This document shows positions 1 to 40,084 of a stretch of DNA of 64,000 bases, piece after piece. The first letter of the stretch is position 1, and each line of letters opens with the position of its first letter. Position numbers and translations under genes: made by a program. The notes beneath the pieces are model-generated. The model worked only from the letters and a program-made list of their open reading frames with translations, made no database searches and had not been told where the DNA came from. Source of the stretch: Phallusia mammillata (taxonomy: Eukaryota); assembly GCA_965637545.1 (NCBI GenBank), contig OZ281495.1, positions 10,292,001 to 10,356,000 on the forward strand, in the 5' to 3' direction.

Positions 1-1722
1 CGTCGCGTGTTTGCTCCAAACGCCACAGGTGGCCAAACTAGTGAATAGTAACCAATTGGTATACATATTAACAGGAGTCGAACTTGGGTTATTATACTTG
101 GTATTTGATTGTTGGCCCCCAATAGCCCCCTAATTATTGTTGAAAAATGTCCGAATTGATCGAAGTTTAAAGGCTTTGTACAATAGAACATGTAGGGGCG
201 CAATTACCGAATTTTATGGTATTAGCTTTGGTCTTTAAGTTGTGATTATAGCAGCTTATTTTTTACCGCTTCTGAGGCACAAGTTCAGGGAAGGGCCAAA
301 AAGCTTTATCCCCCAAAATTTTGACAATTTACAATTTGGTTTCATCAATCGGTATATTGAGCCAGTTTGTACAGAACCACAACTCTTATTTTTTTTTCTT
401 GCTACCCTACTACACACAAGTCGCAACGTACATACAAATGTGTGTGTTTTTGCTATTCGCTAGTGTTGTGTTGTTACGCAAACCTGATACCGACATTTTT
501 TCTCGTTCAAACCCTGGAGCTTAAACAAGGGGTATCCAAAGCATTTTTTAGTGGAGGGCCGCATTTTGGACTTTTTAAAGTTCAGTGGGCCTGGTTTGGG
601 GGAATGCCTAAAACGCAAAGTTTGATTTGTCAGTTTATAAAAAGTCCAAGTTTAGGTCTGTTAAGGTAACGATTAAATTTTTTAAGTAGGCCCTACCACA
701 CATTCGAATGTTCTTGCGATCGCTTCCATTTGTTTTCTCCATCGTGTCTGTGCGCAAGTGATCTTAGAAAATTTGGGAACCACTGTTCTGGTTATAACTG
801 ACGAGAGAGATAAATAATAACAAAAAAACTGATTCCAAATCTTTGGATAAACATTAACATTTTTAAGTTTTATATCATGTCGTCGTTTGCCAAGACAACC
901 GATGGACCCTTCACGACAGAACTAAGTTGATGCTTTTTGCAATTATGTTCCCGAATTTGTCAAAATTTATATAAAACTGAGACACTCCCTCGTCTCACCC
1001 GCGCCGAAACAAAAGGAAAAAAAAACGAATCAGGATCGTATATGTTTGTTTTGTTGTAGAATGGGGCTAGGAGCACGGCGGATCGGATTAAAAACATTGG
1101 TGGGCTGCAGTTGACTCTAGCTGGTTTGGATCACCACGTTGCGAACTATTGTGTTAAATGCCTGAAACAAACCACGGAAACAGATGGTCGTGTGGGAAAT
1201 CTATGTTCCTTGTGCTTACTATATCCGTAAATGAATGTGATGTGCAATGTTGCTGACTCAGCAAAATTACACGTTAGAGCTGAATTGCTTGAAAAACTTT
1301 TATCTGCAAATATGCCAATGAAGTGTACAAACAGCGGGAATATTTTACCCACAATATATGAAAACAATGGGACACATTGAAAAATTAATGCATACACTTA
1401 CCTGGGTTAAAAAAAAAACTAACATCAAGATCTGTTAAAACAAACAGCACAGAAAAAAAGCTTTTAAGTGCCATCAGTTTCTTACCGACAACAGTTCACA
1501 CACAAAGTTATTATGAATTTAATGTAGGCTTGTTTAATTGGTCCCTGTACCTTCAGCGTTTAAGTCTGGCGCGACATGGTCACCACACGTTGTCTAGAAA
1601 TCTGACGAAAAGTTAAACGCAGTCAGACATTGTTTCATGGAAAACACTTCGCAACCTACGCAAGTTGTGTAGGTATCGGCAAGTCACCGCTACTAACATG
1701 GATAACGTGGTTCATGCGTCAT

Positions 1723-1734
1723 CACGTGACGTCA
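1723..1734. promoter_or_regulatory. Overlapping E-box (CACGTG) and CRE palindrome (TGACGTCA) upstream of the lectin gene
   Basis: CACGTGACGTCA at 1723-1734, about 190 nt before the ATG; a probable 5'UTR intron lies at 1839-1908. Motif match only. Confidence 0.35.
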
Positions 1735-1920
1735 CATGTCTTTTTTTTCGGTAACGAAAATGCAGCAGATTGCAACCAGCACTTTTGAGGTCAAATAAAA
1801 ACTAACAGTGTACAAGGGAACGTACACAGACGTTAAGGTATTAACTGAAAAAGCTGTCTAGAATATCGACCATTTTTGTATACTGAAGCATTGGTTGTCG
1901 TTTTACAGATTGAAAAGAAA

Positions 1921-3840
1921 ATGAAATTGGTAATTTTTGTTTACGTAGCTGCCATTACAACATCAGCCTGGTCACAAGAGCAATGGATAAGTTTAAGGGG
2001 ATTTAATTTTAGTTATGCCATCGCCCAGTCTGGAAGCTCGTTCAACTCATCGGATCTTGGAAACATATGCCACACTTTACATCCTGAAGCGTATCCGGTT
2101 GTCATAAAGAAGTATGATCATCAACTTTTTTTGATTAGTCAAATGACTTCCGCCTGGAAGAACGCAGGTGCTAAACCAAACATTAACTTTAAATCAACAT
2201 TACTGTAAACACAGTGGTATTTTGTATAGTTTGAGTTTTTGTTAGACTGACTAGTACTACATGTTATTACAGCTTTTTGTGTACAGAAATGGATCTTTTC
2301 TACATCGGTTTGGTAAACAGTGAAAGTGGGTTTGTGTGGCGGCATGTCGAACGATTAACGTTACCAACATTTTGGGTGGATGGATACCCGAAAAACTTGA
2401 GTAACGCACGATGTGTTGCTATGATACGAAAAGAAACAATTCGGTCGATCAATATGTGGAAAACCGTTGCCTGTTCATCTCCTGGTAACGTAATTTGTCA
2501 ATTGGACGACGCAAAAGGTAAATGTTACCATAAGCACGCTTTATACAAGACCGTTTTATGTAGCGGTTTAAACCGTCAAGCTATTCCAACTTACTTCATT
2601 GAATCAAATGACAAAGGTTTTTGATAAAAAGTAAATAGAATTCAAGTCATTTTTATTTGTATTGTCACATGGGTTTATTATCGAGAACGATCTTAATGGT
2701 TGCGCAAGTATTTTTTGTGAATATTTTTGTTGATAGAACGGGTTCTAGCTTTAAAACCGTGAAATGAAGTGTATGAAATGTGTAGTTCAAAAAAACGAAA
2801 ACAAACCTCTTTTCGGTTGACTGTGACCTGCTTTAATCAAACAAAACTGCGCAAAAGCTTACAGTGTTTGACAGGTTAAAATTATTACTGAAATATTTCC
2901 ATTCTAGATACGAACACATCTACAATACCAAACACCAGCACGCCTCTATCAGTCGCAGAAACATCTGTGCCTGCAGTATATCAATCAAATACCATTGAAT
3001 TTGTTAGTTCTGCGCCAACCACCGTTGTAACCTTTTTACCCACGACAAATACAAAAGAAACCATATTACCTGGTAAAAATAGATGAATTATGATTTTGAT
3101 TTGGAATTTTACAAATGTTTTTGCTTGCAGGAAATTCAAATATGAACCGAACGTATTTTACCATCATCGTGGTAGAAGCGTTTATTATTCTGTTACTGGT
3201 CATCATAATTGTGTCAGTAATTTTTTACTTTTTAGAAAAAATCAGGTACGTGAAATTTAAAAACTTCAACACACACACACTGGGAATGTTTTTTTTTTCA
3301 TAAAACTGTTCATGTTTGTTAATTCAGAAAAATGGAATTTCCGGTTAAAAAGAAAGAACGTTCTTCAGAAGGTAAGGAACTCTAACAACAATTGCTAATC
3401 CAAACTCAATCTTTTTGACAGAATGTAACAACTAAATTTAAATTGATTATAATTAAGTTGTAATCTGGTACCTGGTTTGTTCAGTTGCGGCGGAATTTGG
3501 AAGTAATATCGACAGCTTTTCGTCTGTTTCTGAAGTTTCTGAAACAAACCAAGCTACATCGGACCTTTATTTCTCTTCGGAACAACCCCAAATACCATTC
3601 CGAAAAAGTTTATCTGGAAAACGTTCCTTTTCCAAACATTGTGCCCCAAATAGATCAAAGAAAACGAAAGTTGATTCCAATCCTAACAATGTTGAAATGA
3701 ATAGCATTTCTGAAGTCAAAGGTGTAGACAATTCGGAATATGGAAAAGGCAAGTCTTTTTGCGTGGTTGACTCTAACGGAGTTGCTCAATCTAATCCGAG
3801 AAGAGTGACTGAAAGTTACAGTGTTGTTCGGAAACTTTAA
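1921..3840 (+). CDS. Type-I transmembrane C-type lectin-domain receptor, about 402 aa; exons 1921-2204, 2273-2517, 2908-3072, 3131-3245, 3328-3371, 3485-3840
   Basis: GT-AG junctions give one open frame of 1209 nt. Signal peptide MKLVIFVYVAAITTSAWS; CTLD motifs ICHTL, FYIGL, FVW, FWVDGYP, RCVAM, WKTVACSSPGNVICQ; Ser/Thr/Pro-rich stalk; TM YFTIIVVEAFIILLLVIIIVSVIFYFL; Ser-rich tail ending ESYSVVRKL*. AATAAA at 3946-3951. The exon-2 acceptor could alternatively be 2246 or 2255 (same phase). Confidence 0.85.
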
Positions 3841-22429: not shown

Positions 22430-22780
22430 CAGGACTTTCCAAACTTTTTCAATCGCGACCCCTTTTAATCTTCCCAATTTTTCTGCGACCCTTTATAGTT
22501 AATATGAACAGTGCAAAGTATGCACTTCTTGTATTTATTAAAGGCTTATTTCGAGCGTAAAATAAAAACAAAAAAGCAAACATTTATTTCGTGCGACTGC
22601 TTTCTGCTACCAAGCAAGTCCAGCCGTGGCTCAATATTTGTTAATGCTGGTCTTAAAGCTGTTTCTAGGTTGCTTAAGCTGGAACGGTATTTTGTTTTGA
22701 TTGCTGTCAACGTTGAAAAAGCTAACTTCAGAGAATATGCTCTAACGCTACCCCGGCCACCCCGAGTTTGGGAAGCCCTG
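22430..22780. mobile_element. Old hAT MITE duplicated with the array spacer (paralog 42127-42585; broken copy about 34535-35115)
   Basis: TIR CAGG(G/A)CTT(T/C)CCAAACT; the TSD is ATCTATAC / ATCTAAAC at the 42127 copy. Confidence 0.75.
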
Positions 22781-29300: not shown

Positions 29301-32300
29301 GCGCGCGCGATTGGCGATGTTGTGTTTGAAAATGTGTCCCGCATTTTGTGGGGGAGTGTTACATCGCCATCGTACATATTATTATGTTTTCTATGTTTCC
29401 CGCCAGTAGGCTTAACTCACTTGTATGGCGCAATGTTGTGCAACCTGGTGACATTGTCTGTCACACATTTGGTGCTTATGATGTCACAACCTTGGCATTG
29501 TTTTACTGAAGTCCCAACTTGTAAGCGTGACTGCCTCGTGTTTATTAGCGACTGGATGTTATAGAGGCAGCATGCTTTATCTAATTGACCGGTTATGTTT
29601 GTTTCTTTGCTAACGAATAGGAAATTTGTGCTAACTGAACTGTTGCCGGTCGTCCAATGTGTAATTTGTGCATTTCTGGCCCACGGATCCCACCGTCGTC
29701 AGCCAACTTGCTGTTTGCTGTAAATAACTGTATTTTTCCGGTAAGCCTTGTTGCTTAAAGTCTCGCAGTTCGTTACTAATCTGTTTTGGTGATGTTTATT
29801 GAATTTGATGCTGTATTTGCAGAACCTAAAATCTCCTGATCGCTTTGAATGTTACTGTGACTCTGGTCCTATAATAGTTCGGTAAGAGTCAACTGTACTG
29901 ATAATTTCTCGTCTGTTTCCTTAACTAAATTAGTGCATATTTGCAGAAACCGCATTTGCCTTTGTGCTCGTCTTGCTGCTGAACCCTTGAGCACCGTCTC
30001 TGTCCTGAATTGCCTTAATAAAAGAATTCGTTATTTTGGCTCTTGGTGCCTTGGAGTTGTTGAGCGCGAGGAAAGGCGCGTTGAGAACCGTTCTAGGAAT
30101 TTAAGCGATCACCCCTGCTGTGCTGTCTGGGCGCATAGAGTCACGCCCTCTACCAATTAAAAGACAGCGCAACACCACTAATAAATGTACAGACTAACAG
30201 TATCAATTTGTTTTCGAAAAATCCGGGTCTGAAAGTGTAATTTGGCACATGGCGAGAAAGTTGATGTTTTCGATGCTTCTGTTTCTGTTTATTGACATGT
30301 AGGTCACAGTAGGGTAACAACTTTTGAATGTTTAAAAAGTTTTATGGTTTTAACCAATTTACTTAATTTTTTGTAGATTTCAAATAATTTATTTTTTTGA
30401 AAGCACATTTCTTTGTTTTTAAGGTTTAAACCAACACGACTTACCGATGCTACTGGGACGCATTGAGTAATGTTGAAAACAAAATATGGATGTTGAGTAT
30501 TTGTCACACAACTCGGATCAACGTCTTCAGGCTTAACATTCTCGTTGGGCGCGATGTACAAGATGTCAAATTCTTCGGCGTTCAACTTGTTTAGATTCTT
30601 TTCGTCAAGGCTATAATACAAAACAAGGTTTATGTGCAAAAAAGAAAGATAATTCTCTCACGCCACTCTAAATTGCATTGTTAACACTACAGAAAAACTG
30701 GCAACGTTTCACACGAGACATGCAACTGTACTTAAAGTAGAAATGTACCGAATATTCGGTTTTCCGAATTTTTTAAGCAAAGCGTTGATTTTGTACAAGG
30801 TAGATTGATTAAGCAACGATGTCACATTGGTAACAATTTTTATTTTTTAGATGGACTCCTAACAATGTTTAGGTGATTTGGTTGCACGGAAGCACAACAA
30901 GAAAACCTGATGTAGTTTTAACTAACAACATATTGACATCAGACTATTGGCATTTGGCAAAACAACTGCACAACGTTGTTCAAAACACACTCAAAATCTG
31001 CTTACTTGATAACCGTTGTTTCTCCACATTCAATTTGGGCAGGAGGAGGGGGAGGGGGAGGTGGTGGACAAGCTGCAAATCAACAACAGATAATAAGCGT
31101 TGCGCAGTCCTACATATTTTACACAAGCATCAACATGACATCGTGGCGATTTGACGGCAGACGTATATGATGAATTTGTATTTGTTGCACGGCAGACGTA
31201 TTTTGACGGCAGACGTATATGAAGAATTTGTATTTGTTGCACACATAACGAAACAACAGTCAGATCACACTTACTTCTCTCCACGTCAACATGAAGGTAA
31301 GTGTTAGAAGCCCCCGGTTGACTTTTGCTAGCATACATAAGTTGTACTTTGTCACCTCCAATGACCCAGGATTGGGAAAAATTAAACGCCCCGTTATAGG
31401 TTCCATACCTTGTTTGGGACCCAGTTTTACCCAAAGCATCCTCATCCCAGTTTATCTAAAAGGTCAGGAGCTATTTACATTGAATAACGTGAATGTATCT
31501 GAAATAGGATCGTTTTATAAATACATGAAATGGTGAATGTTAACACAGTTTAATTACTAAAACTTGTTGAATTATCCATCCGTTTGTCGGAGTGGTTCGT
31601 AACCGGGGATTAATTACTTATAAAGAGCAATTTGTATTTTTAGAGGTAATTTTCTATTTGTTATTTTCGTGACGTCATCCTCCAGTGACGTCTTAGTTTG
31701 TAGATTGTAGTAACGATAATAAAAAAGTTCGGAACCATCGGCCTTCGTAACACAATTCTAAGCAAGATATCCCTTACGAAAAGATAGTCTGCCGCTGAAA
31801 AGACCATGTCCAGGTTGAACTGAAAAGTACATCCGACCTCAGCCTCAAACTTCCAAACGCAAAATAAGCCGGGTGTTAGTGGTGGGCCTCTTTCAATTCT
31901 AGTAAAATCTTCATTGTACGTTTCCCCACAATCTTCCGTCGCTACAAACAAGTTGCGAAGTTGAACTTATCTTAGTTTATATTACAGGACCGCTAGTTTC
32001 AGAACGTTAAGCAAAACCTGATTTTTTCGCATGGCAATTGCCAAATCAAAGTTTATTTTTATTTAAAGATGAAAAAATTATCCGTACCCAAACATACGTC
32101 TTTAGATTCTAAAAATGTGCAAATTCTGTTCAATTAAAAAACTGTAAAAAATGCGCGTTTTTGTAGGTCATACATGCTTGGTGTCTCCAATCTAATGGAA
32201 AAGCAGCAGTGTTGATGCAGGTAAGAAATAAGTTGAAACCTGATGAACGCACACCACCGGTCTCTGTACCAACGTTAATAAAAGTGCCAAGCAACGTTGC

Positions 32301-33064: not shown

Positions 33065-34807
33065 CGTAAAACTACTTGCTAAATGATTGAGACCCAACAA
33101 AATTAAGATCCGACTATTCTGTAAACGACCTCAGGTAGTAGCCTAATGAACACCCTTTATTGGGATCTGTATGCTTTATGTTACATTAACAGTGTTTCGC
33201 AAAGGCAGAAGGGATAGAGGATGCGTTTGGATTAGTCATTTGTCGGTTTGGCATGGATTGTTTTGCACTAAGGCTTTGATTACCATACCAACGATATGGT
33301 TATTTTTAAACTGCGCTCTGGGCTAAAAAAATGTGAGAAAAATTTCCTAATCAATTTAAATTCAAAAGAATTTTGTTCAATCACACGCAGAGTAAAACAG
33401 GCGAATAGCTCATTTGGCTGGATTCAAAAACTCCAACAAATCTAATAGCAATTGGGATGGCATTTTCGAGATAAACGACTGGAATACGTCAGTCAGTTTT
33501 GTAGTTTAATGCATACGGCTTTCGAGGTTTCGAGTTTATACCAAACAACACGGTGGAATTATATCAAGCCTAATCATATATTGCTACACGAGCAACCCAA
33601 GCTTTGAATATCCTGTTTTCTGCTATGGTTCTAGCTACTGATGAAGCCGTTCCAGGTAAACACTATGGACGGAAATATCAGATTATTCATCCTTTTCACA
33701 ACACAAACCATTCTGTTTACTGCAATGCTTCTGCCAGCATGCGAACCTTCTGGCATTTTTGTCTTTGTGCACAAATACCGTTTAGGGAAACATGGTAACG
33801 TTTAGCAACTGAAATAAGGGAACGCGAACCCCGGTTTAGAAAACGGAACGTTATATCGATGGTAATACCACCCTGTGAATGATAGCAATGGTGTTGTGTG
33901 CACTATATGGTCTTGTTACTCTGCTGCCTTATGCAGTATAGTTCAAAGCTGCCCGGGAATGTTTTTCGGCAAAAACGTAAATCTACATGTTTTAAAATTC
34001 ATATTACATCAGTGTGTTTTGACCTTAGTATAGCTGCGGCCCGAAACAAACCACACTATGAAGGGTTATTTCGTATTTGGAGAGTTGTAAGCGGGTCCGT
34101 TGTGTCCCAAATTGGGCTCAAAAGTCAGATTACGTAACGTGATATTACTTTACAAATGTTAATATAGGTCCTGATTCAAATTAGACATTCCCGAATCCAA
34201 ATCCCTTACAATTCTAATCCATGTGCATAAAACTAATCATGACAAGTAATGAGAGGTATTAACCGGGTTTGCTGTCTTACGCAATACATACGCCGGTTGC
34301 AGAAGCCTTTTCGAGCACAATGGTTGTGTAGTAAAGCAGAAAACATCAGAATTAGTCATCTATTGCAATGCAAACCAATTGAGCGCTACCGAATTTCCTG
34401 TTTTTTGACGGAACGAAGCGAGCCGCGAACTGAGCGCTTGTGTTCACCTTATAGGTTGCTGACATCATTCCTTTTGCGATAAGCTACACCAAAATGTAGC
34501 AGTTAACATTCCATTTTGGCATACACTTAAACCAAGGCTCTGCGACCCTTTATAGTTAATATGATAAACAGTGCAAAAATATGCATTTCTTGTATTTATT
34601 ACAGGCTTATTTCGAGCGTGAAATAAAAACAAAAAAGCAAACATTTATTTCGTGTGATGGGTGCGACTGCTTTCTGCTACCAAGCAAGTCCAGCAGTGGC
34701 TCAATATTTGTTAATTCTGGTCTTAAAGCTGTTTCTAGGTTGCTTAAAGCTGGAACGGTATTTTGTTTTGATTGCTGTCAACGTTGAAAACGCTGACTTC
34801 AGAGAAT

Positions 34808-35101
34808 GGTAGTAGCTCACTGACGCGGTGCCTCCTAGGAGGTCCAAAAGTGCTTAATTTTCGATAGGTGGCGCAAAGAGCTGAACTATTTATTTAGCGG
34901 CTAAAGAGGGTTGGTTTAGGATGCAAGTGTTTAAAAATTTTACATTAGTAACTGATTTTTTTATTAGTTTTATTGAATTTTAAATGCTAATACCTTACCC
35001 CGACCCTAATAGCCCTAACCGTTAGCATTTTTTGAGATATACCGTTTTAAAAATTAAGCACTTTTGGATCTCCTGTGAGGCACCGCGTCAGTAGCTCTAC
35101 C
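34808..35101. mobile_element. 294-bp MITE with ~50-bp imperfect TIRs and a 9-bp TSD (Merlin- or MULE-like)
   Basis: Left GGTAGTAGCTCACTGACGCGGTGCCTC...AAGTGCTTAATTT with its inverse at the right end; TSD TCAGAGAAT (34799-34807 and 35102-35110); single TCAGAGAAT at the paralogous site near 22728. Confidence 0.88.
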
Positions 35102-35115
35102 TCAGAGAATATGCT

Positions 35116-35210
35116 GGGAGGGATGACAGCAGCCTACACGTGGCCCCTCCTGTTAAGGCATTAAGTCCTCTGCGCAAAGACGACCTCTAATGCCGAACAG
35201 ATGCTGTCAT
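35116..35210 (+). ncRNA. HDV-like self-cleaving ribozyme at the LINE 5' end
   Basis: P1 GGGAGGG (35116-22) / CCCTCCT (35145-51) with G1-U wobble; P2 ATGACAGCA (35123-31) / TGCTGTCAT (35202-10); P3 GCC/GGC with 7-nt L3 TACACGT; P1.1 AC/GT (35136-37 / 35152-53); P4 GGCATTA/TAATGCC; J4/2 C-A-G-A with candidate catalytic C35198. Activity is inferred. Confidence 0.88.
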
Positions 35211-37990
35211 AAGGACTACCGTTCAAATTCTAGGAGGAACTGTCCTCAAAGCAGGATGTCAAAACCGAGAAAACCTCTACGGGGAATCCCTTGTAGTAAT
35301 AGTCTTGAGTTCAACATCATGCAGCTAAATGTGGAAGGACTCACTTCATGCAAGCTTAACATCATCGAGCAGCTTGCCAAAGCCAACAAAGTCTCGATAA
35401 TCCTACTGCAGGAAACACATCGGACAACATCGGACAAGCTAACACTTCCAGATTTTGTGCTAGCGGGATTTATCCCCAGCAGAACACATGGCCTCGCCAC
35501 GTTCGTACGAGAAAACCTGAGCTGGACGCATGAGAGCCAATCTCCAACATCATCGGAGATCGAATGGCTCTGCACCAACGTCTGCGGGAATCACATCGTG
35601 AATGTGTACAAGCCGCCACCAACGCAATTGTCACCTTCGCCCTTCCCGGTGTTTCCAACCCCATGTATCTACGCCGGTGACTTTAACTGCCAGCACACAA
35701 CGTGGGGGTACAAATCAAGCAACACAGACGGAGAACAACTTGTCAACTGGGCCAGCAACGCCGGTCTCACCCTACTGCATCATCCAAAGGATGCCTGCAG
35801 TTTCCACTCTGCCCGCTGGAACACCGGAACTAACCCGGACCTGGCATTTGCGGCAACCGCCAGTGGCTTGCCACTTCCCGAGCGACGCGTGATAGCGAAA
35901 TTTCCTCGCTCTCAACATCGACCTTCACTGATCACTACAGGCAAATACGTAACATCAGTCACTAGCAAGCCTGTAAAGCGATGGAATTTTCGCAAGGCTG
36001 ACTGGAAACGCTTTTCCCTGATCACCAACGATGAAACGGACATGCTTCCAACACCCAACGACACCAACTTAAATCAAGCGTACCAGGAATTCTGTAAACT
36101 TCTCATAGAAGCGGCTAAAAAATGCATCCCACGAGGCTATCGAAAGACCTACACGCCGTGTTGGGACAGCGAATGCGACCGCCTTTACAGCGCCTTTCTT
36201 ACCGCACCCCCGGGTACCGAGACGGACGCATCAGCCACTTTATTGCTATCCCATCTCAACGAGCAACGTCGACATCGCTGGGCAGAAGCGGTGGAGTCCA
36301 TTGACTTCACACATTCCAGCCGGAAAGCATGGAGTACTATAAATCGACTCGCTGGCAGGTCGGCGACTCCGCCAGCAAAATGTCCCATTACCGCAAACGC
36401 CATAGCTTCGCAATTGGTCAAAAATGGAACCTTCTCGACATCAACTCGCGAATCATCACGACTCGTGACCAAAGAACTGTCAGCATTGCGGAAGGCCAAC
36501 GGACCGGACGCCAACCTGTCTGGGGATTTCACCATTGCAGAACTGTCTGTGGCCCTTCAACATCTGAAGTCTGGTAAAGCATCGGGCCCAGATCACCTTT
36601 GCCCAGAGTTTTTGCTTCATGCCGGAGCCACGCTAAAGTCCTGGTTGTGCAGCTTTCTTAACACCTGTCTGCGTCAGCTCAAGATTCCGAAAATCTGGAG
36701 AAAAGCGACAGTAATCGCTATCCCCAAGCCAAACAAACCTCTGGATGAAGCAAAGAGCTACCGTCCGATATCTCTGCTTCGCACACCATTTAAGATCTTT
36801 GAGCGCTTGATTCATGCCCGTGTAGAGCCAGTCATCGACCAACAACTCCCCCAGGAGCAGGCTGGTTTCAGATGCGGAAGATCCACTGTTGATCAAGTCA
36901 CTCTACTCACACAAGATCTGGAGGAAAGCTTCGAAGCTAAAAAGAAGACTGGTGCTGTTTTTCTAGACCTTACAGCTGCCTACGACACAGTCTGGCACCG
37001 CGGCCTTAATTGCAAACTGCTCCGCCTGTTGCCAGACAAGCACATGGTCGATATGATCATGGAGCTGGTCCACAACCGCAGCTTCGTACTCAAGACCAGC
37101 AACGGTCAGCAAAGCCGATTACGCCGCCTCAAGAATGGCGTGCCCCAGGGATCTGTTTTGGCTCCGCTACTGTTCAACATATACACTAGCGACATACCCA
37201 CTACAGTCTCTAAGAAGTATGCCTATGCCGATGACCTGGCTATCATGCATTCCGATAACGATTGGGAACACGTGGAAAAGACTCTCAGCCAGGACATGTC
37301 AGTCCTGTCAGGCTACCTTCGGATGTGGCGGCTAAGGCTAAGCGAGACTAAAACGGTTTCAGCGGCCTTTCACCTTAACAACAAGGAGGCCAAACGCAAG
37401 TTGTCCGTCCAGACCAATGGGAAAAGTCTGGACTTTAACGCCGCACCAACTTATCTCGGTGTGCAGCTGGATAGGTCACTTACCTACCGCAAACATCTTG
37501 TAACGAGCCGCAAAAAAATCACATCACGCGTTGCTCTTATCAGAAGACTGGCAGGCACTGGTTGGGGAGCCAGCGCGGACATTCTCCGTGTGTCTTCCCT
37601 AGCCCTTGTTTACGCCCCAGCCGAATACTGCGCTCCTGTGTGGGGCAGAAGCGCCCACACCCATCTTATTGATAAGTGCCTTAACGACGCAATGCGCATC
37701 GTCACTGGCTGCCTGCGCCCCACACCAGTGGACTACCTACCCATCCTGGCAGACATCCAGCCGGCTGACCTCCGTCGCAAAGAAGCCACATTACGTCTAG
37801 GACGCCGCGCTCTGATGGAACAACATCTTCTCTATCACAAGATCACAGAGCCGGCGCACAGAAAAAAAAGATTAACATCAAGGTGGCCTTTCGTACCGGC
37901 AGCTCTTGAGCTACTCGGCGACAATAGCACCTCAGACGGAACCGACTGGATGTCCACCAAGTGGAAAAAGAGATGGGAAACCAAGATGGA
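35116..37990 (+). mobile_element. Non-LTR retrotransposon (I group, Ingi/Vingi-like), 5'-complete and 3'-truncated
   Basis: Single EN-RT ORF with a ribozyme fold at the 5' end. No 3' tail, C-terminal zinc finger or right TSD; sequence switches abruptly to U3 intron sequence at AAGGTTTAAACCAAC. The clade call is from recalled motifs (QLNVEG, GTGWGA..LALVYAPAEYCAPVW), not a search. Confidence 0.85.
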
Positions 37991-38036
37991 AAGGTTTAAA
38001 CCAACACGACTTACCGATGCTACTGGGACGCATTGA
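35190..38036 (+). CDS. APE endonuclease plus reverse transcriptase; C-terminus runs into antisense U3 sequence
   Basis: APE motifs QLNVEG, LLQETH, GDFNC, TNPDLAF, SQHRP; RT motifs YRPISLL, EQAGFR, FLDLTAAYDTV, QGSVLAPLLF, YADD, TYLGVQLD. The listed ATG lies inside the ribozyme; ATG 35256 or later is more plausible. Confidence 0.92.
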   Translation: MPNRCCHKDYRSNSRRNCPQSRMSKPRKPLRGIPCSNSLEFNIMQLNVEGLTSCKLNIIEQLAKANKVSIILLQETHRTTSDKLTLPDFVLAGFIPSRTHGLATFVRENLSWTHESQSPTSSEIEWLCTNVCGNHIVNVYKPPPTQLSPSPFPVFPTPCIYAGDFNCQHTTWGYKSSNTDGEQLVNWASNAGLTLLHHPKDACSFHSARWNTGTNPDLAFAATASGLPLPERRVIAKFPRSQHRPSLITTGKYVTSVTSKPVKRWNFRKADWKRFSLITNDETDMLPTPNDTNLNQAYQEFCKLLIEAAKKCIPRGYRKTYTPCWDSECDRLYSAFLTAPPGTETDASATLLLSHLNEQRRHRWAEAVESIDFTHSSRKAWSTINRLAGRSATPPAKCPITANAIASQLVKNGTFSTSTRESSRLVTKELSALRKANGPDANLSGDFTIAELSVALQHLKSGKASGPDHLCPEFLLHAGATLKSWLCSFLNTCLRQLKIPKIWRKATVIAIPKPNKPLDEAKSYRPISLLRTPFKIFERLIHARVEPVIDQQLPQEQAGFRCGRSTVDQVTLLTQDLEESFEAKKKTGAVFLDLTAAYDTVWHRGLNCKLLRLLPDKHMVDMIMELVHNRSFVLKTSNGQQSRLRRLKNGVPQGSVLAPLLFNIYTSDIPTTVSKKYAYADDLAIMHSDNDWEHVEKTLSQDMSVLSGYLRMWRLRLSETKTVSAAFHLNNKEAKRKLSVQTNGKSLDFNAAPTYLGVQLDRSLTYRKHLVTSRKKITSRVALIRRLAGTGWGASADILRVSSLALVYAPAEYCAPVWGRSAHTHLIDKCLNDAMRIVTGCLRPTPVDYLPILADIQPADLRRKEATLRLGRRALMEQHLLYHKITEPAHRKKRLTSRWPFVPAALELLGDNSTSDGTDWMSTKWKKRWETKMERFKPTRLTDATGTH

Positions 38037-40084
38037 GTAATGTTGAAAACAAAATATGGATGTTGAGTATTCGTCACACAACTCGGATCAACGTCTTCAG
38101 GCTTAACATTCTCGTTGGGCGCGATGTACAAGATGCGTTCAACTTGTTTAGATTCTTTTCGTCAAGGCTATGATACAAAACAAGGTTTATGTGCAAAAAA
38201 GAAAGATAATTCTCTCACGCCACTCTAAATTGCACTGTTAACACTACAGAAAAACTGGCAACGTTTCACACGAGACATGCAACTGTACTTAAAGTAGAAA
38301 TGTACCGAATATTCGGTTTTCCGAATTTTTTTGTTCAAAACACACTCAAAATCTGCTTACTTGATAACCGTTGTTTCTCCTCATTCAATTTGGGCAGGAG
38401 GAGGGGGAGGGGGAGGTGGTGGACAAGCTGCAAATCAACAACAGATAATAAGCGTTGCGCAGTCCTACATATTTTACACAAGCATCAACATGACATCGTG
38501 GCGATTTGACGGCAGACGTATATGATAAGAATTTGTATTTGTTACACACATAACAAAACAACAGTCAGATCACACTTACTTCTCTCCACGTCAACATGAA
38601 GGTAAGTGTTAGAAGCCCCCGGTTGACTTTTGCTAGCATACATAAGTTGCACTTTGTCACCTCCAATGACCCAGGATTGGGAAGAATCAAACGCCCCGTT
38701 ATAGGTTCCATACCTTGTTTGGGACCCAGTTTTACCCAAAGCATCCTCATCCCAGTTTATCTAAAAGGTCAGGAGCTATTTACACTGAATAACGTGAATG
38801 TATCTGAAATAGGATCGTTTTATAAATACATGAAATGGTGAATGTTAACACAGTTTAATTACTAAAACTTGTTGAATTATCCATCTGTTTGTCGGAGTGG
38901 TTCGTAACCGGTGATTAATTACTTATAAAGAGCAATTTGTATTTTTAGAGGTAATTTTCTATTTGTTATTTTCGTGACGTCATCCTCCAGTGACGTCTTA
39001 GTTTGTAGATTGTAGTAACGATAATAAAAAAGTTCGGAACCATCGGCCTTCGTAACACAATTCTAAGCAAGATATCCCTTACGAAAAGATAGTCTGCCGC
39101 TGAAAAGACCATGTCCAGGTTGAACTGAAAAGTACATCCGACCTCAGCCTCAAACTTCCAAACGCAAAATAAGCCGGGTGTTAGTGGTGGGCCTCTTTCA
39201 ATTCTAGTAAAATCTGTTAAAGGAGCAGTGTTGATGCAGGTAAGAAATGAGTTGAAACCTGATGAACGTACACCACCGGTCTCTGTACCAACGTTAATAA
39301 AAGTGCCAAGCAACGTTTCAGTGTCATCCTTTCCGTCAAACACCTGTTCAGGCAAACAAAAAATTAAAAGATAACAAATTTAAAACATTCAATATCGGCA
39401 AAAATTGTCCGACCTTTTAAGCCGAAGAAAGCCAATAAAGTCACATACTTTGAAATGCATTTCCGTAAGGTTTTACAATACATTTTTTCCTAATTTTAAG
39501 CTTACAAGTTAATAAAGAAACAAACTTATTTCGTTGAAAAGCATCTTCAAAGGGTAATAGAAGACATTAGAATTAGAAAAGGCTAAATTCTTTTTCAATG
39601 AAATAAGCATTAAATTGTTCCTTACTAGATTGTCAACTGATTTTGACCCGAAAATAAACATTCCCCAACTTGTGATATAATCACCAAAACTTGGAAATTA
39701 TTGCAAGAATGATAATAGAACAGGGAAAGAATCAATTTATCAGGATTTAAGATGTTTTTTTTAACAAACAAATACGCATTACTTAATTTCAAATGCAGTA
39801 TCTATGTTTACCTGGCATTGGTCCCCAATGAAGCCGTTAGCCAGATAAATGGACGTACGAAACATACTTGAGATTATTACTGAAGCAAAATTGCAATTGG
39901 CGTCAATTACAATTTGTCCGCCACCGCTGGTGTCACGTGGAGCAGCTCCACAAAATCCATCAACTGAAATCGACGTAAAATAGATACCACACGTTTTATG
40001 AAACAAATTAATTTTACTCTTACCTTGACCTATTGTCAGGAAAACCAGCACAAAAAACAAATGACCCCACGCTGTAAAATCCAT
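38015..40084 (-). pseudogene. Array unit U3: recent duplicate of the U2 5' half, with C-D exon fusion, a frameshift and no exons H-L
   Basis: Exons A 40024-40084, B 39812-39963, fused CD 39083-39343, E 38580-38760, F 38361-38427, G 38015-38167 (153 nt versus 166 nt, a 13-nt deletion). The A/B region translation is identical to U2. Confidence 0.88.

What the first reader, a model, noticed from the sequence alone, without database searches (positions are those of the whole stretch)
35116..35210. Complete HDV-like ribozyme beginning at the first nucleotide of the LINE
Every element of the nested double pseudoknot is present in the correct order: 7-bp P1 with G1-U wobble, perfect 9-bp P2, 3-bp P3, 7-nt L3, J4/2 CAGA matching C-N-R-A, and an extended P4 (GGCATTA/TAATGCC then GTC-C-TCT/AGA-C-GAC). 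P1.1 is an unusual AC/GU pair rather than the common CC/GG, with compensatory changes on both sides. The predicted cut site before G35116 coincides with the point where homology to the paralogous spacer (TCAGAGAATATGCT) stops. HDV-like ribozymes at 5' ends of R2, RTE and L1Tc/ingi elements are established. This instance and its P1.1 variant may be undescribed.
Basis: partly seen in the sequence, partly recalled or inferred. Interest (0 to 1): 0.78.

Follow-up and report, generated by a model that had tools for sequence, protein, structure and literature searches.

The report
HDV-like ribozyme heading a LINE
The first 95 bases of a jumping gene (a LINE) in this sea-squirt genome fold as a hepatitis-delta-type self-cutting RNA that marks the element's exact start; this is real and well supported, but it is a new example of a known trick.

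Summary
Window 35116-35210 holds every element of an HDV-like nested double pseudoknot at the stated coordinates. A loose descriptor gives 0.14 hits per shuffled window, and none with P2 of 7 bp or more. Rfam's CPEB3 ribozyme model scores it 31.9 bits, just under the cut-off of 35.

A 99%-identical, full-length sister copy is flanked by an 11-bp target-site duplication that places the element's first base exactly at G1 of the ribozyme. Six independent insertions in this genome start at the same GGGAG.

Homologous LINE ORFs (40-63% identity) from other sources, including the ascidian Clavelina and a teleost, carry the same fold at the same place. Fifteen of 19 pairs show compensatory changes, and the catalytic C, the L3 U...CG and the last A of J4/2 are invariant.

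- The window copy lacks its 3' end (it stops near 37983).
- P2 is probably 7 bp plus a 2-nt J1/2.
- The A-U pair in P1.1 arose from a one-sided change.

No cleavage or RNA evidence could be obtained. The scan has already noted HDV-like ribozymes heading another LINE family in this genome. Verdict: a new member of a known kind.

The parts
35116..35122 (+). P1 5' strand (GGGAGGG). The predicted cleavage site is 5' of G35116.
   Evidence: Pairs with 35145-35151. Five of 7 pairs covary across relatives. Six independent insertions start here.
35123..35131 (+). J1/2 plus P2 5' strand. The inner 7 nt (35125-35131) form the conserved P2.
   Evidence: Nine contiguous pairs with 35202-35210. All 7 inner pairs covary and 100% of cells are paired.
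35132..35134 (+). P3 5' strand (GCC)
   Evidence: Pairs with 35142-35144. Two of 3 pairs covary and 100% of cells are paired.
35135..35141 (+). L3 (UACACGU). U35135, C35139 and G35140 are invariant. A35136 and C35137 form P1.1.
   Evidence: Invariant columns T20, C24 and G25 of alignment A2.
35142..35144 (+). P3 3' strand (GGC)
35145..35151 (+). P1 3' strand (CCCTCCT)
35152..35156 (+). J1/4. G35152 and U35153 pair with C35137 and A35136 (P1.1).
   Evidence: The inner pair is C-G in 10 relatives and U-A in 1. The outer pair is paired only in the window copy.
35157..35194 (+). P4: an extended hairpin of 7 bp, then 3 bp and 3 bp separated by single-base bulges.
   Evidence: MFE folds. Every relative has a hairpin here, of different sequence and length.
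35195..35201 (+). J4/2 (GAACAGA). C35198 is the candidate catalytic cytosine.
   Evidence: C35198, A35196 and A35201 are invariant in 11 sequences (columns C83, A81, A86).
35202..35210 (+). P2 3' strand
35116..37983 (+). LINE copy with a complete 5' end. It lacks about 340 bp at the 3' end, including the tail.
   Evidence: 99.2% identical over 2869 bp to the sister copy L053:470-3338. Other copies also match only up to 37983.
35190..38036 (+). [quoted passage not shown] The first in-frame ATG lies in the P4 3' strand. The last ~53 nt are flanking DNA, not LINE.
34808..35101 (.). Unrelated MITE just upstream, with a 9-bp target-site duplication (34799-34807 and 35102-35110).

Best explanation
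[quoted passage not shown] Inferred mechanism: the element is transcribed as part of a longer RNA or from an upstream start. The ribozyme folds co-transcriptionally into the nested double pseudoknot. C35198 in J4/2, together with a metal ion held by the G35116.U35151 wobble and the U35135.G35140 reverse wobble, cleaves the bond between U35115 and G35116. This leaves an RNA that begins exactly at G35116 with a 5'-OH. That RNA is the template for target-primed reverse transcription, so full-length copies start at G1.

The long ORF is open from an ATG inside the 3' half of the ribozyme. The fold probably also serves cap-independent translation initiation, as proposed for R2 and RTE ribozymes.

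Shown here: the fold, its covariation, the invariant catalytic positions and the coincidence of G1 with the element's 5' terminus. Inferred: cleavage itself, the catalytic roles of individual residues and the role in translation.
For: - All helices are present. MFE folding recovers P2, P3 and P4.
- Chance expectation is 0.14 loose hits per shuffled window, and 0 of 100 shuffles give P2 of 7 bp or more.
- Rfam CPEB3 model: 31.9 bits for the window and 37.1 bits, above the cut-off, for relative L097.
- Sister copy L053 spans 471-3677 (3207 bp) with an intact 1031-aa ORF and a (GAA)n tail. It is flanked by the 11-bp duplication CTGCTTAAAAT, so its first base is G1 of the ribozyme.
- Six independent 5' junctions in this genome start at GGGAG with unrelated flanks.
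- One related family is seen on four contigs with unrelated upstream flanks; the shared sequence begins at ribozyme position 1.
- Ten relatives whose ORFs are 40-63% identical all carry the fold at the ORF start.
- On alignment A2, 92.6% of cells are paired against 38-53% when partners are slid. Fifteen of 19 pairs change on both sides, and 0 of 500 shuffles reach this.
- Invariant positions are C35198, A35201, U35135, C35139 and G35140. These match the U...CG of L3 and the C-R-R-A of J4/2 used as the family descriptor in PMC6326823.
Against:
- The window copy itself falls short of any Rfam gathering score.
- Within this genome only two copies keep the fold intact and they are identical, so in-genome covariation is limited to one compensatory P2 pair in L047 and one G.U in L015.
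- MFE folding also predicts a CUGUU/GAACAG helix that would compete with the 3' end of P1 and with J4/2.
- U35115 could extend P1 by a U.G wobble with G35152 and so compete with P1.1.
- Exon-like ORFs of the neighbouring host genes appear, by eye only, to lie on the opposite strand, so a co-transcript for this particular copy is not evident (no Pfam support).
Confidence: 0.85

Rival explanations
1. The conserved fold is a structured 5' UTR with HDV-like architecture. It would serve as a binding site for the element's protein or as a translation-initiation platform, but would no longer cleave.
For: The ORF start codon lies inside the fold in 9 of 10 lineages. R2 protein binding and IRES-like roles are described for R2 ribozymes (PMC6765202). 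No cleavage data were obtained here.
Against: The positions that matter only for catalysis are invariant across ORFs as divergent as 40% identity: the J4/2 cytosine, the U and G of L3, and a G.U or G-C pair at position 1 in 8 of 10. Elements start exactly at G1.
Confidence: 0.06
2. The exact 5' end at G35116 is set by an internal promoter that starts transcription at +1, as the Pr77 region does in L1Tc, rather than by cleavage. The HDV-like fold would then be secondary.
For: In L1Tc the same 77 nt act as both promoter and ribozyme (PMC3383444). The window copy has no evident sense-strand host transcript upstream.
Against: A promoter would not explain compensatory changes in 15 of 19 RNA pairs or the invariant catalytic C. 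The two roles are not exclusive.
Confidence: 0.08
3. Chance resemblance to the HDV fold in G+C-rich LINE 5' sequence.
For: The descriptor gives one other weak hit in the window, at 38687-38794.
Against: Shuffles give 0 of 100 with P2 of 7 bp or more. There is cross-species covariation and a near-threshold Rfam score.
Confidence: 0.01

Closest known systems
HDV-like ribozymes at the 5' ends of non-LTR retrotransposons. Examples are R2 (Eickbush & Eickbush 2010; PMC3774820), R4/Dong, RTE and baggins/LOA (Ruminski et al. 2011, as cited in PMC3774820, PMC6765202 and PMC5786205), and L1Tc/ingi (PMC3185411, PMC4035085).
   Same: The nested double-pseudoknot fold sits at the first nucleotides of the element, and the cleavage site coincides with the 5' junction. 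The element has no obvious promoter requirement. The ORF begins at or inside the ribozyme, which fits the translation-initiation role proposed for R2 and RTE ribozymes.
   Different: The host LINE is a 3.2-kb single-ORF element with a C-terminal Cys-His motif, no RNase H domain and a trinucleotide-repeat tail. Its clade was not determined here. If it is Vingi-like, it is not among the six clades (R1, R2, R4, RTE, Ingi, LOA) listed in PMC5786205. It also inserts at dispersed sites, unlike R2 and R4.
Mammalian CPEB3 ribozyme (Rfam RF00622)
   Same: It is the best Rfam match. P1 is 7 bp and P3 is 3 bp. L3 is 7 nt and differs at one base (UACACGU here, UUCACGU in CPEB3). J1/4 starts GU. J4/2 follows C-N-R-A.
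   Different: The window copy scores 31.9 bits, below the gathering score of 35. It is not intronic in a CPEB3 gene and is not orthologous. P4 is much longer. P1.1 has a second A-U pair where CPEB3 has a U.U mismatch.
Earlier findings of this scan in the same genome (s1-368999, s1-399136): 65-nt HDV-like ribozymes at +1 of another LINE family.
   Same: Same genome, same kind of element and the same position at the first nucleotide.
   Different: This one is 95 nt with an extended P4 and belongs to a different, low-copy family. My model R1 finds at least 10 hits of 68 nt elsewhere in the genome that may be that other family; I could not fetch them.

Membership tests
HDV-like self-cleaving ribozymes (fold family) | Nested double pseudoknot with the strand order P1-P2-P3-L3-P3'-P1'-P1.1-P4-J4/2-P2' | tested here: met
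   Coordinates read. Descriptor hit. Covariation in all three main helices. P4 hairpin.
HDV-like self-cleaving ribozymes (fold family) | G1 paired with a pyrimidine (G.U wobble) at the cleavage site | tested here: met
   G35116.U35151. Across 10 informative sequences the pair is GU in 6, GC in 2, AU in 1 and unpaired in 1.
HDV-like self-cleaving ribozymes (fold family) | L3 with a conserved U at its first position and CG at positions 5-6 (reverse-wobble U.G; descriptor summarised in PMC6326823) | tested here: met
   U35135, C35139 and G35140 are invariant in alignment A2. The non-canonical pair itself cannot be tested with these tools.
HDV-like self-cleaving ribozymes (fold family) | Catalytic cytosine in J4/2 within C-R-R-A or C-N-R-A | tested here: met
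   CAGA at 35198-35201. C35198 and A35201 are invariant in 11 sequences.
HDV-like self-cleaving ribozymes (fold family) | P1.1 of one or two pairs between L3 and J1/4 | tested here: met
   The inner pair is C35137-G35152 and changes to U-A in L091. The outer A35136-U35153 pair is present only in the window copy.
HDV-like self-cleaving ribozymes (fold family) | Site-specific, Mg2+-dependent self-cleavage giving a 5'-OH and a 2',3'-cyclic phosphate | not testable with these tools
   A bench assay is needed.
Rfam RF00622 CPEB3_ribozyme | Score at or above the gathering score of 35 bits | tested here: not met
   31.9 bits for the window and 27.6 for the sister copy. Relative L097 reaches 37.1. I read this as the same fold class, not membership of the mammalian family.
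Retrotransposon 5'-terminal HDV-like ribozymes | The cleavage site coincides with the element's 5' junction | tested here: met
   An 11-bp target-site duplication flanks sister copy L053. There are six independent junctions in this genome and four in a related family.
RTE clade of LINEs | RT-domain phylogeny with reference elements | not tested
   No labelled reference sequences were available. The architecture fits my recollection of RTE: 3.2 kb, single ORF, 37-nt 3' UTR and a trinucleotide-repeat tail. The C-terminal C-x-C...H-x4-C motif (seen by eye in the translated sequence) and the PF14529 match point instead to the I/Jockey-type groups.
Vingi clade of LINEs | Compact single-ORF APE LINE without an RNase H domain (description in PMC13708176) | tested here: inconclusive
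   Pfam finds only APE and RT domains and no RNase H, and the element is 3207 bp. This architecture is not unique to Vingi, and no phylogeny was done.

The most novel reading that the evidence does not exclude
This ribozyme may define a widely spread LINE lineage (tunicates, a teleost and unidentified animals in environmental assemblies) that lies outside the six clades so far reported to carry 5' ribozymes, possibly Vingi-like. In this lineage the start codon is embedded in the 3' half of the ribozyme in nearly every member, so one RNA fold would both trim the 5' end and position the ribosome.
Probability: 0.3. Interest if true: 0.5.

Novelty: new member of a known kind. Interest (0 to 1): 0.35.

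Why it matters
It adds a well-supported, covariation-backed example of an HDV-like ribozyme at the first nucleotide of a LINE, in a chordate lineage where only R2 ribozymes (in Ciona) were found in the papers I could read.

It also shows that a whole cross-phylum LINE lineage keeps the fold with the ORF start inside it. That gives a compact natural set of about ten divergent sequences for testing how these ribozymes couple 5' processing to cap-independent translation.

It does not change the known picture of how such elements work.

Tried and rejected
- **Rfam, whole window, gathering scores:** nothing.
- **In-genome covariation:** the 21 copies of the 5' end are mostly decayed or 5'-truncated and add little.
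- **LINE clade:** PDB sequence search, the protein atlas and literature searches did not settle it. Ruminski et al. 2011 and Kojima et al. 2011 are not held in the library.
- **Host gene orientation:** Pfam on four exon-like ORFs gave nothing.
- **Earlier 65-nt findings:** fetching them by inferred coordinates (L084, L085) did not recover them.
- **Second descriptor hit, 38687-38794:** rejected as chance. It has an A+U-rich P1, no CG in L3 and a P2 of 6 bp, and the chance expectation is 0.14 hits per window.
- **L093 and L095:** these contigs come from human-gut metagenome samples and were left unused.

Full report
**Observation**

- P1 is GGGAGGG (35116-35122) paired with CCCTCCT (35145-35151), including a G35116.U35151 wobble.
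- 35123-35131 pairs with 35202-35210 over nine contiguous positions (P2).
- P3 is GCC/GGC and encloses the 7-nt L3, UACACGU.
- G35152 and U35153 can pair with C35137 and A35136 (P1.1).
- 35157-35194 forms a long hairpin (P4).
- J4/2 ends in CAGA (35198-35201).

A pseudoknot-free MFE fold recovers P2, P3 and P4 as claimed (-34.9 kcal/mol, z = -2.85). P1 cannot appear in such a fold.

**Is it more than chance?**

I wrote a loose descriptor. It requires a 7-bp P1 with G.U allowed, a 3-bp P3 with at least two G-C pairs, an L3 of 6-8 nt, a two-pair P1.1, C-N-R-A before P2' and a P2 of at least 5 bp. It finds this site plus one weak hit in the 64-kb window. One hundred dinucleotide-preserving shuffles give a mean of 0.14 hits, and none with P2 of 7 bp or more.

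Rfam gives nothing at gathering scores over the whole window. On 35000-35350, however, the CPEB3 ribozyme model scores 31.9 bits (cut-off 35, E = 7.8e-7) and the HDV model 24.2 bits.

**The 5' boundary**

The window belongs to a 240-Mb eukaryotic assembly. Earlier notes of this scan name it the ascidian Phallusia mammillata, which I did not check. The closest named protein relative is from the ascidian Clavelina lepadiformis.

The motif TCAGAGAATATGCT recurs in a paralogous spacer at 22728-22741, and homology to that spacer ends at 35115. Just upstream lies an unrelated 294-bp MITE (34808-35101) with long terminal inverted repeats and a 9-bp target-site duplication. It is present in dozens of copies in the genome.

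A 99.2%-identical sister copy on another chromosome (L053) is complete:
- It is 3207 bp long, with an intact 1031-aa ORF, a 37-nt 3' UTR and a (GAA)n tail.
- It is flanked on both sides by the 11-bp duplication CTGCTTAAAAT.
- The base after the upstream duplicate is G1 of the ribozyme.

In all, six independent insertions in this genome begin at GGGAG with unrelated flanks. The other copies are 5'-truncated.

**The LINE**

The window ORF (35190-38036, 948 aa) has an APE endonuclease and a reverse transcriptase domain and no RNase H. The window copy is not complete. Homology to all other copies stops near 37983. The next 340 bp are 95% identical to the start of the neighbouring host paralog unit at 30421-30773. 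So about 340 bp of the LINE's 3' end, including the tail, have been lost, and the last codons of the listed ORF are flanking DNA.

I could not place the clade.
- The size, single ORF, very short 3' UTR and trinucleotide tail resemble RTE as I recall it.
- The C-terminal Cys-His motif, the PF14529 match and the 'X-element' name that NCBI gives a fish homologue point to the I/Jockey-type groups.
- The architecture fits the published description of Vingi (PMC13708176).

**Relatives elsewhere**

A protein search found about 200 homologues at 40-63% identity, mostly on 3.1-3.6-kb contigs. I fetched DNA for eleven of them. Two contigs from human-gut metagenome samples (L093, L095) I left unused.

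In ten lineages, including Clavelina (L088) and the teleost Diretmus argenteus (L092), an HDV-like fold sits at the same place, ending at or just after the ORF start. In one family, seen on four contigs from different samples, the upstream flanks are unrelated and the shared sequence begins at ribozyme position 1.

On the 11-sequence alignment A2 the named structure performs as follows:

| Measure | Result |
|---|---|
| Cells forming a standard pair | 92.6% (38-53% when partners are slid by 1-3 columns) |
| Pairs with changes on both sides | 15 of 19 |
| P2 | 7 of 7 pairs covary, 100% paired |
| P3 | 100% paired, 2 of 3 pairs covary |
| P1 | 93% paired, 5 of 7 pairs covary |
| Shuffles reaching the observed values | 0 of 500 |

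The invariant columns include U35135, C35139 and G35140 in L3 and C35198 and A35201 in J4/2. These are the positions that the published descriptor fixes for the reverse-wobble U.G and the catalytic cytosine (PMC6326823). Every relative also has a P4 hairpin of different sequence and length. One relative (L097) passes the Rfam CPEB3 cut-off at 37.1 bits.

**Corrections of detail**

- In relatives J1/4 is almost always GU, and the L3 base opposite the U is U or C. P1.1 is therefore a single C-G pair, which covaries to U-A in one lineage. The window element alone gains a second, A-U pair through a one-sided change. P1.1 of one or two pairs is already described for L1Tc and CPEB3 (PMC3185411, PMC4908430).
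- The two outer pairs of the '9-bp' P2 correspond to an unpaired AA in most relatives, so they are probably a J1/2 linker.
- Many relatives share a purine-rich internal loop at the base of P4: AGUA on the 5' side and GAAA before the catalytic C. The window element keeps only part of it.

**Mechanism**

The best explanation is the established one for R2, R4, RTE, LOA/baggins and L1Tc/ingi elements (PMC3774820, PMC6765202, PMC5786205, PMC3185411). The element RNA is made as part of a longer transcript. The ribozyme cleaves 5' of G1, and the trimmed RNA is the template for retrotransposition, which is why full-length copies start at G1.

The long ORF is open from an ATG inside the 3' half of the ribozyme in 9 of 10 lineages. 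This fits the proposed role in translation initiation on an uncapped RNA, but that part is inference.

Cleavage itself is not shown. For this particular copy the neighbouring host exons seem, by eye only, to lie on the opposite strand. The copy is also 3'-truncated. It may therefore never be processed productively even if its ribozyme is intact.

**Novelty**

The kind is known, and this scan has already noted HDV-like ribozymes heading another LINE family in this genome (s1-368999, s1-399136). My covariance model also finds at least ten 68-nt hits and other single hits elsewhere in the genome. The Rfam CPEB3 model finds a separate 66-nt ribozyme at 55.3 bits on another chromosome.

What is new is the specific LINE lineage, its breadth across animals and the embedded start codon. 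I rate it a new member of a known kind, with interest 0.35.

Noticed in passing
window 34808-35101: A 294-bp MITE with terminal inverted repeats of about 54 nt (starting GGTAG) and a 9-bp target-site duplication, TCAGAGAAT (34799-34807 and 35102-35110). At least 40 copies at 92-97% identity occur across the genome.
   Followed up: partly
window 37981-38330: The LINE copy breaks off near 37983 and is joined directly to sequence 95% identical to 30421-30773, the start of the neighbouring host paralog unit. A deletion or unequal exchange removed the LINE's 3' end and the rest of the spacer.
   Followed up: partly
L052:1501-1566 (-) = G000:C6:851293-851369: A separate 66-nt HDV-like ribozyme scores 55.3 bits on Rfam CPEB3_ribozyme (cut-off 35). 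No LINE-sized ORF lies within 1.5 kb downstream.
   Followed up: partly
G000, e.g. C3:12277857-12277924, C1:3759503-3759570, C3:4100985-4101052, C1:7414032-7414110: The covariance model built from the cross-species alignment finds at least 10 hits of 68 nt, most scoring 41.1 bits, and one hit of 79 nt. These are probably other ribozyme-headed repeat families, perhaps those of the earlier notes.
   Followed up: no
L086, L088-L092, L096 (P4 base); window 35153-35156 and 35195-35197: Relatives share a purine-rich internal loop between P1.1 and P4: AGUA after the J1/4 GU, and GAAA just before the catalytic C. HDV and CPEB3 have no such loop.
   Followed up: no
window 35115; L053:470; position -1 of L090, L092 and L097-L099: The base before the cleavage site is often U. 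It could extend P1 by a U.G wobble with the first J1/4 base and so compete with P1.1. PMC3185411 discusses this effect for L1Tc.
   Followed up: no
L087:106-139: This contig carries a 17-nt tandem copy of the ribozyme's first bases directly upstream of G1.
   Followed up: no
3' ends of L053, L089, L091, L096, L097-L100: Tails are short microsatellites that differ by lineage ((GAA)n, (GAC)n, (CAA)n, (GA)n), after 3' UTRs of only about 10-40 nt.
   Followed up: partly
window 38687-38794: A second, weak descriptor hit with an A+U-rich P1, no CG in L3 and a 6-bp P2. I judged it to be chance.
   Followed up: yes
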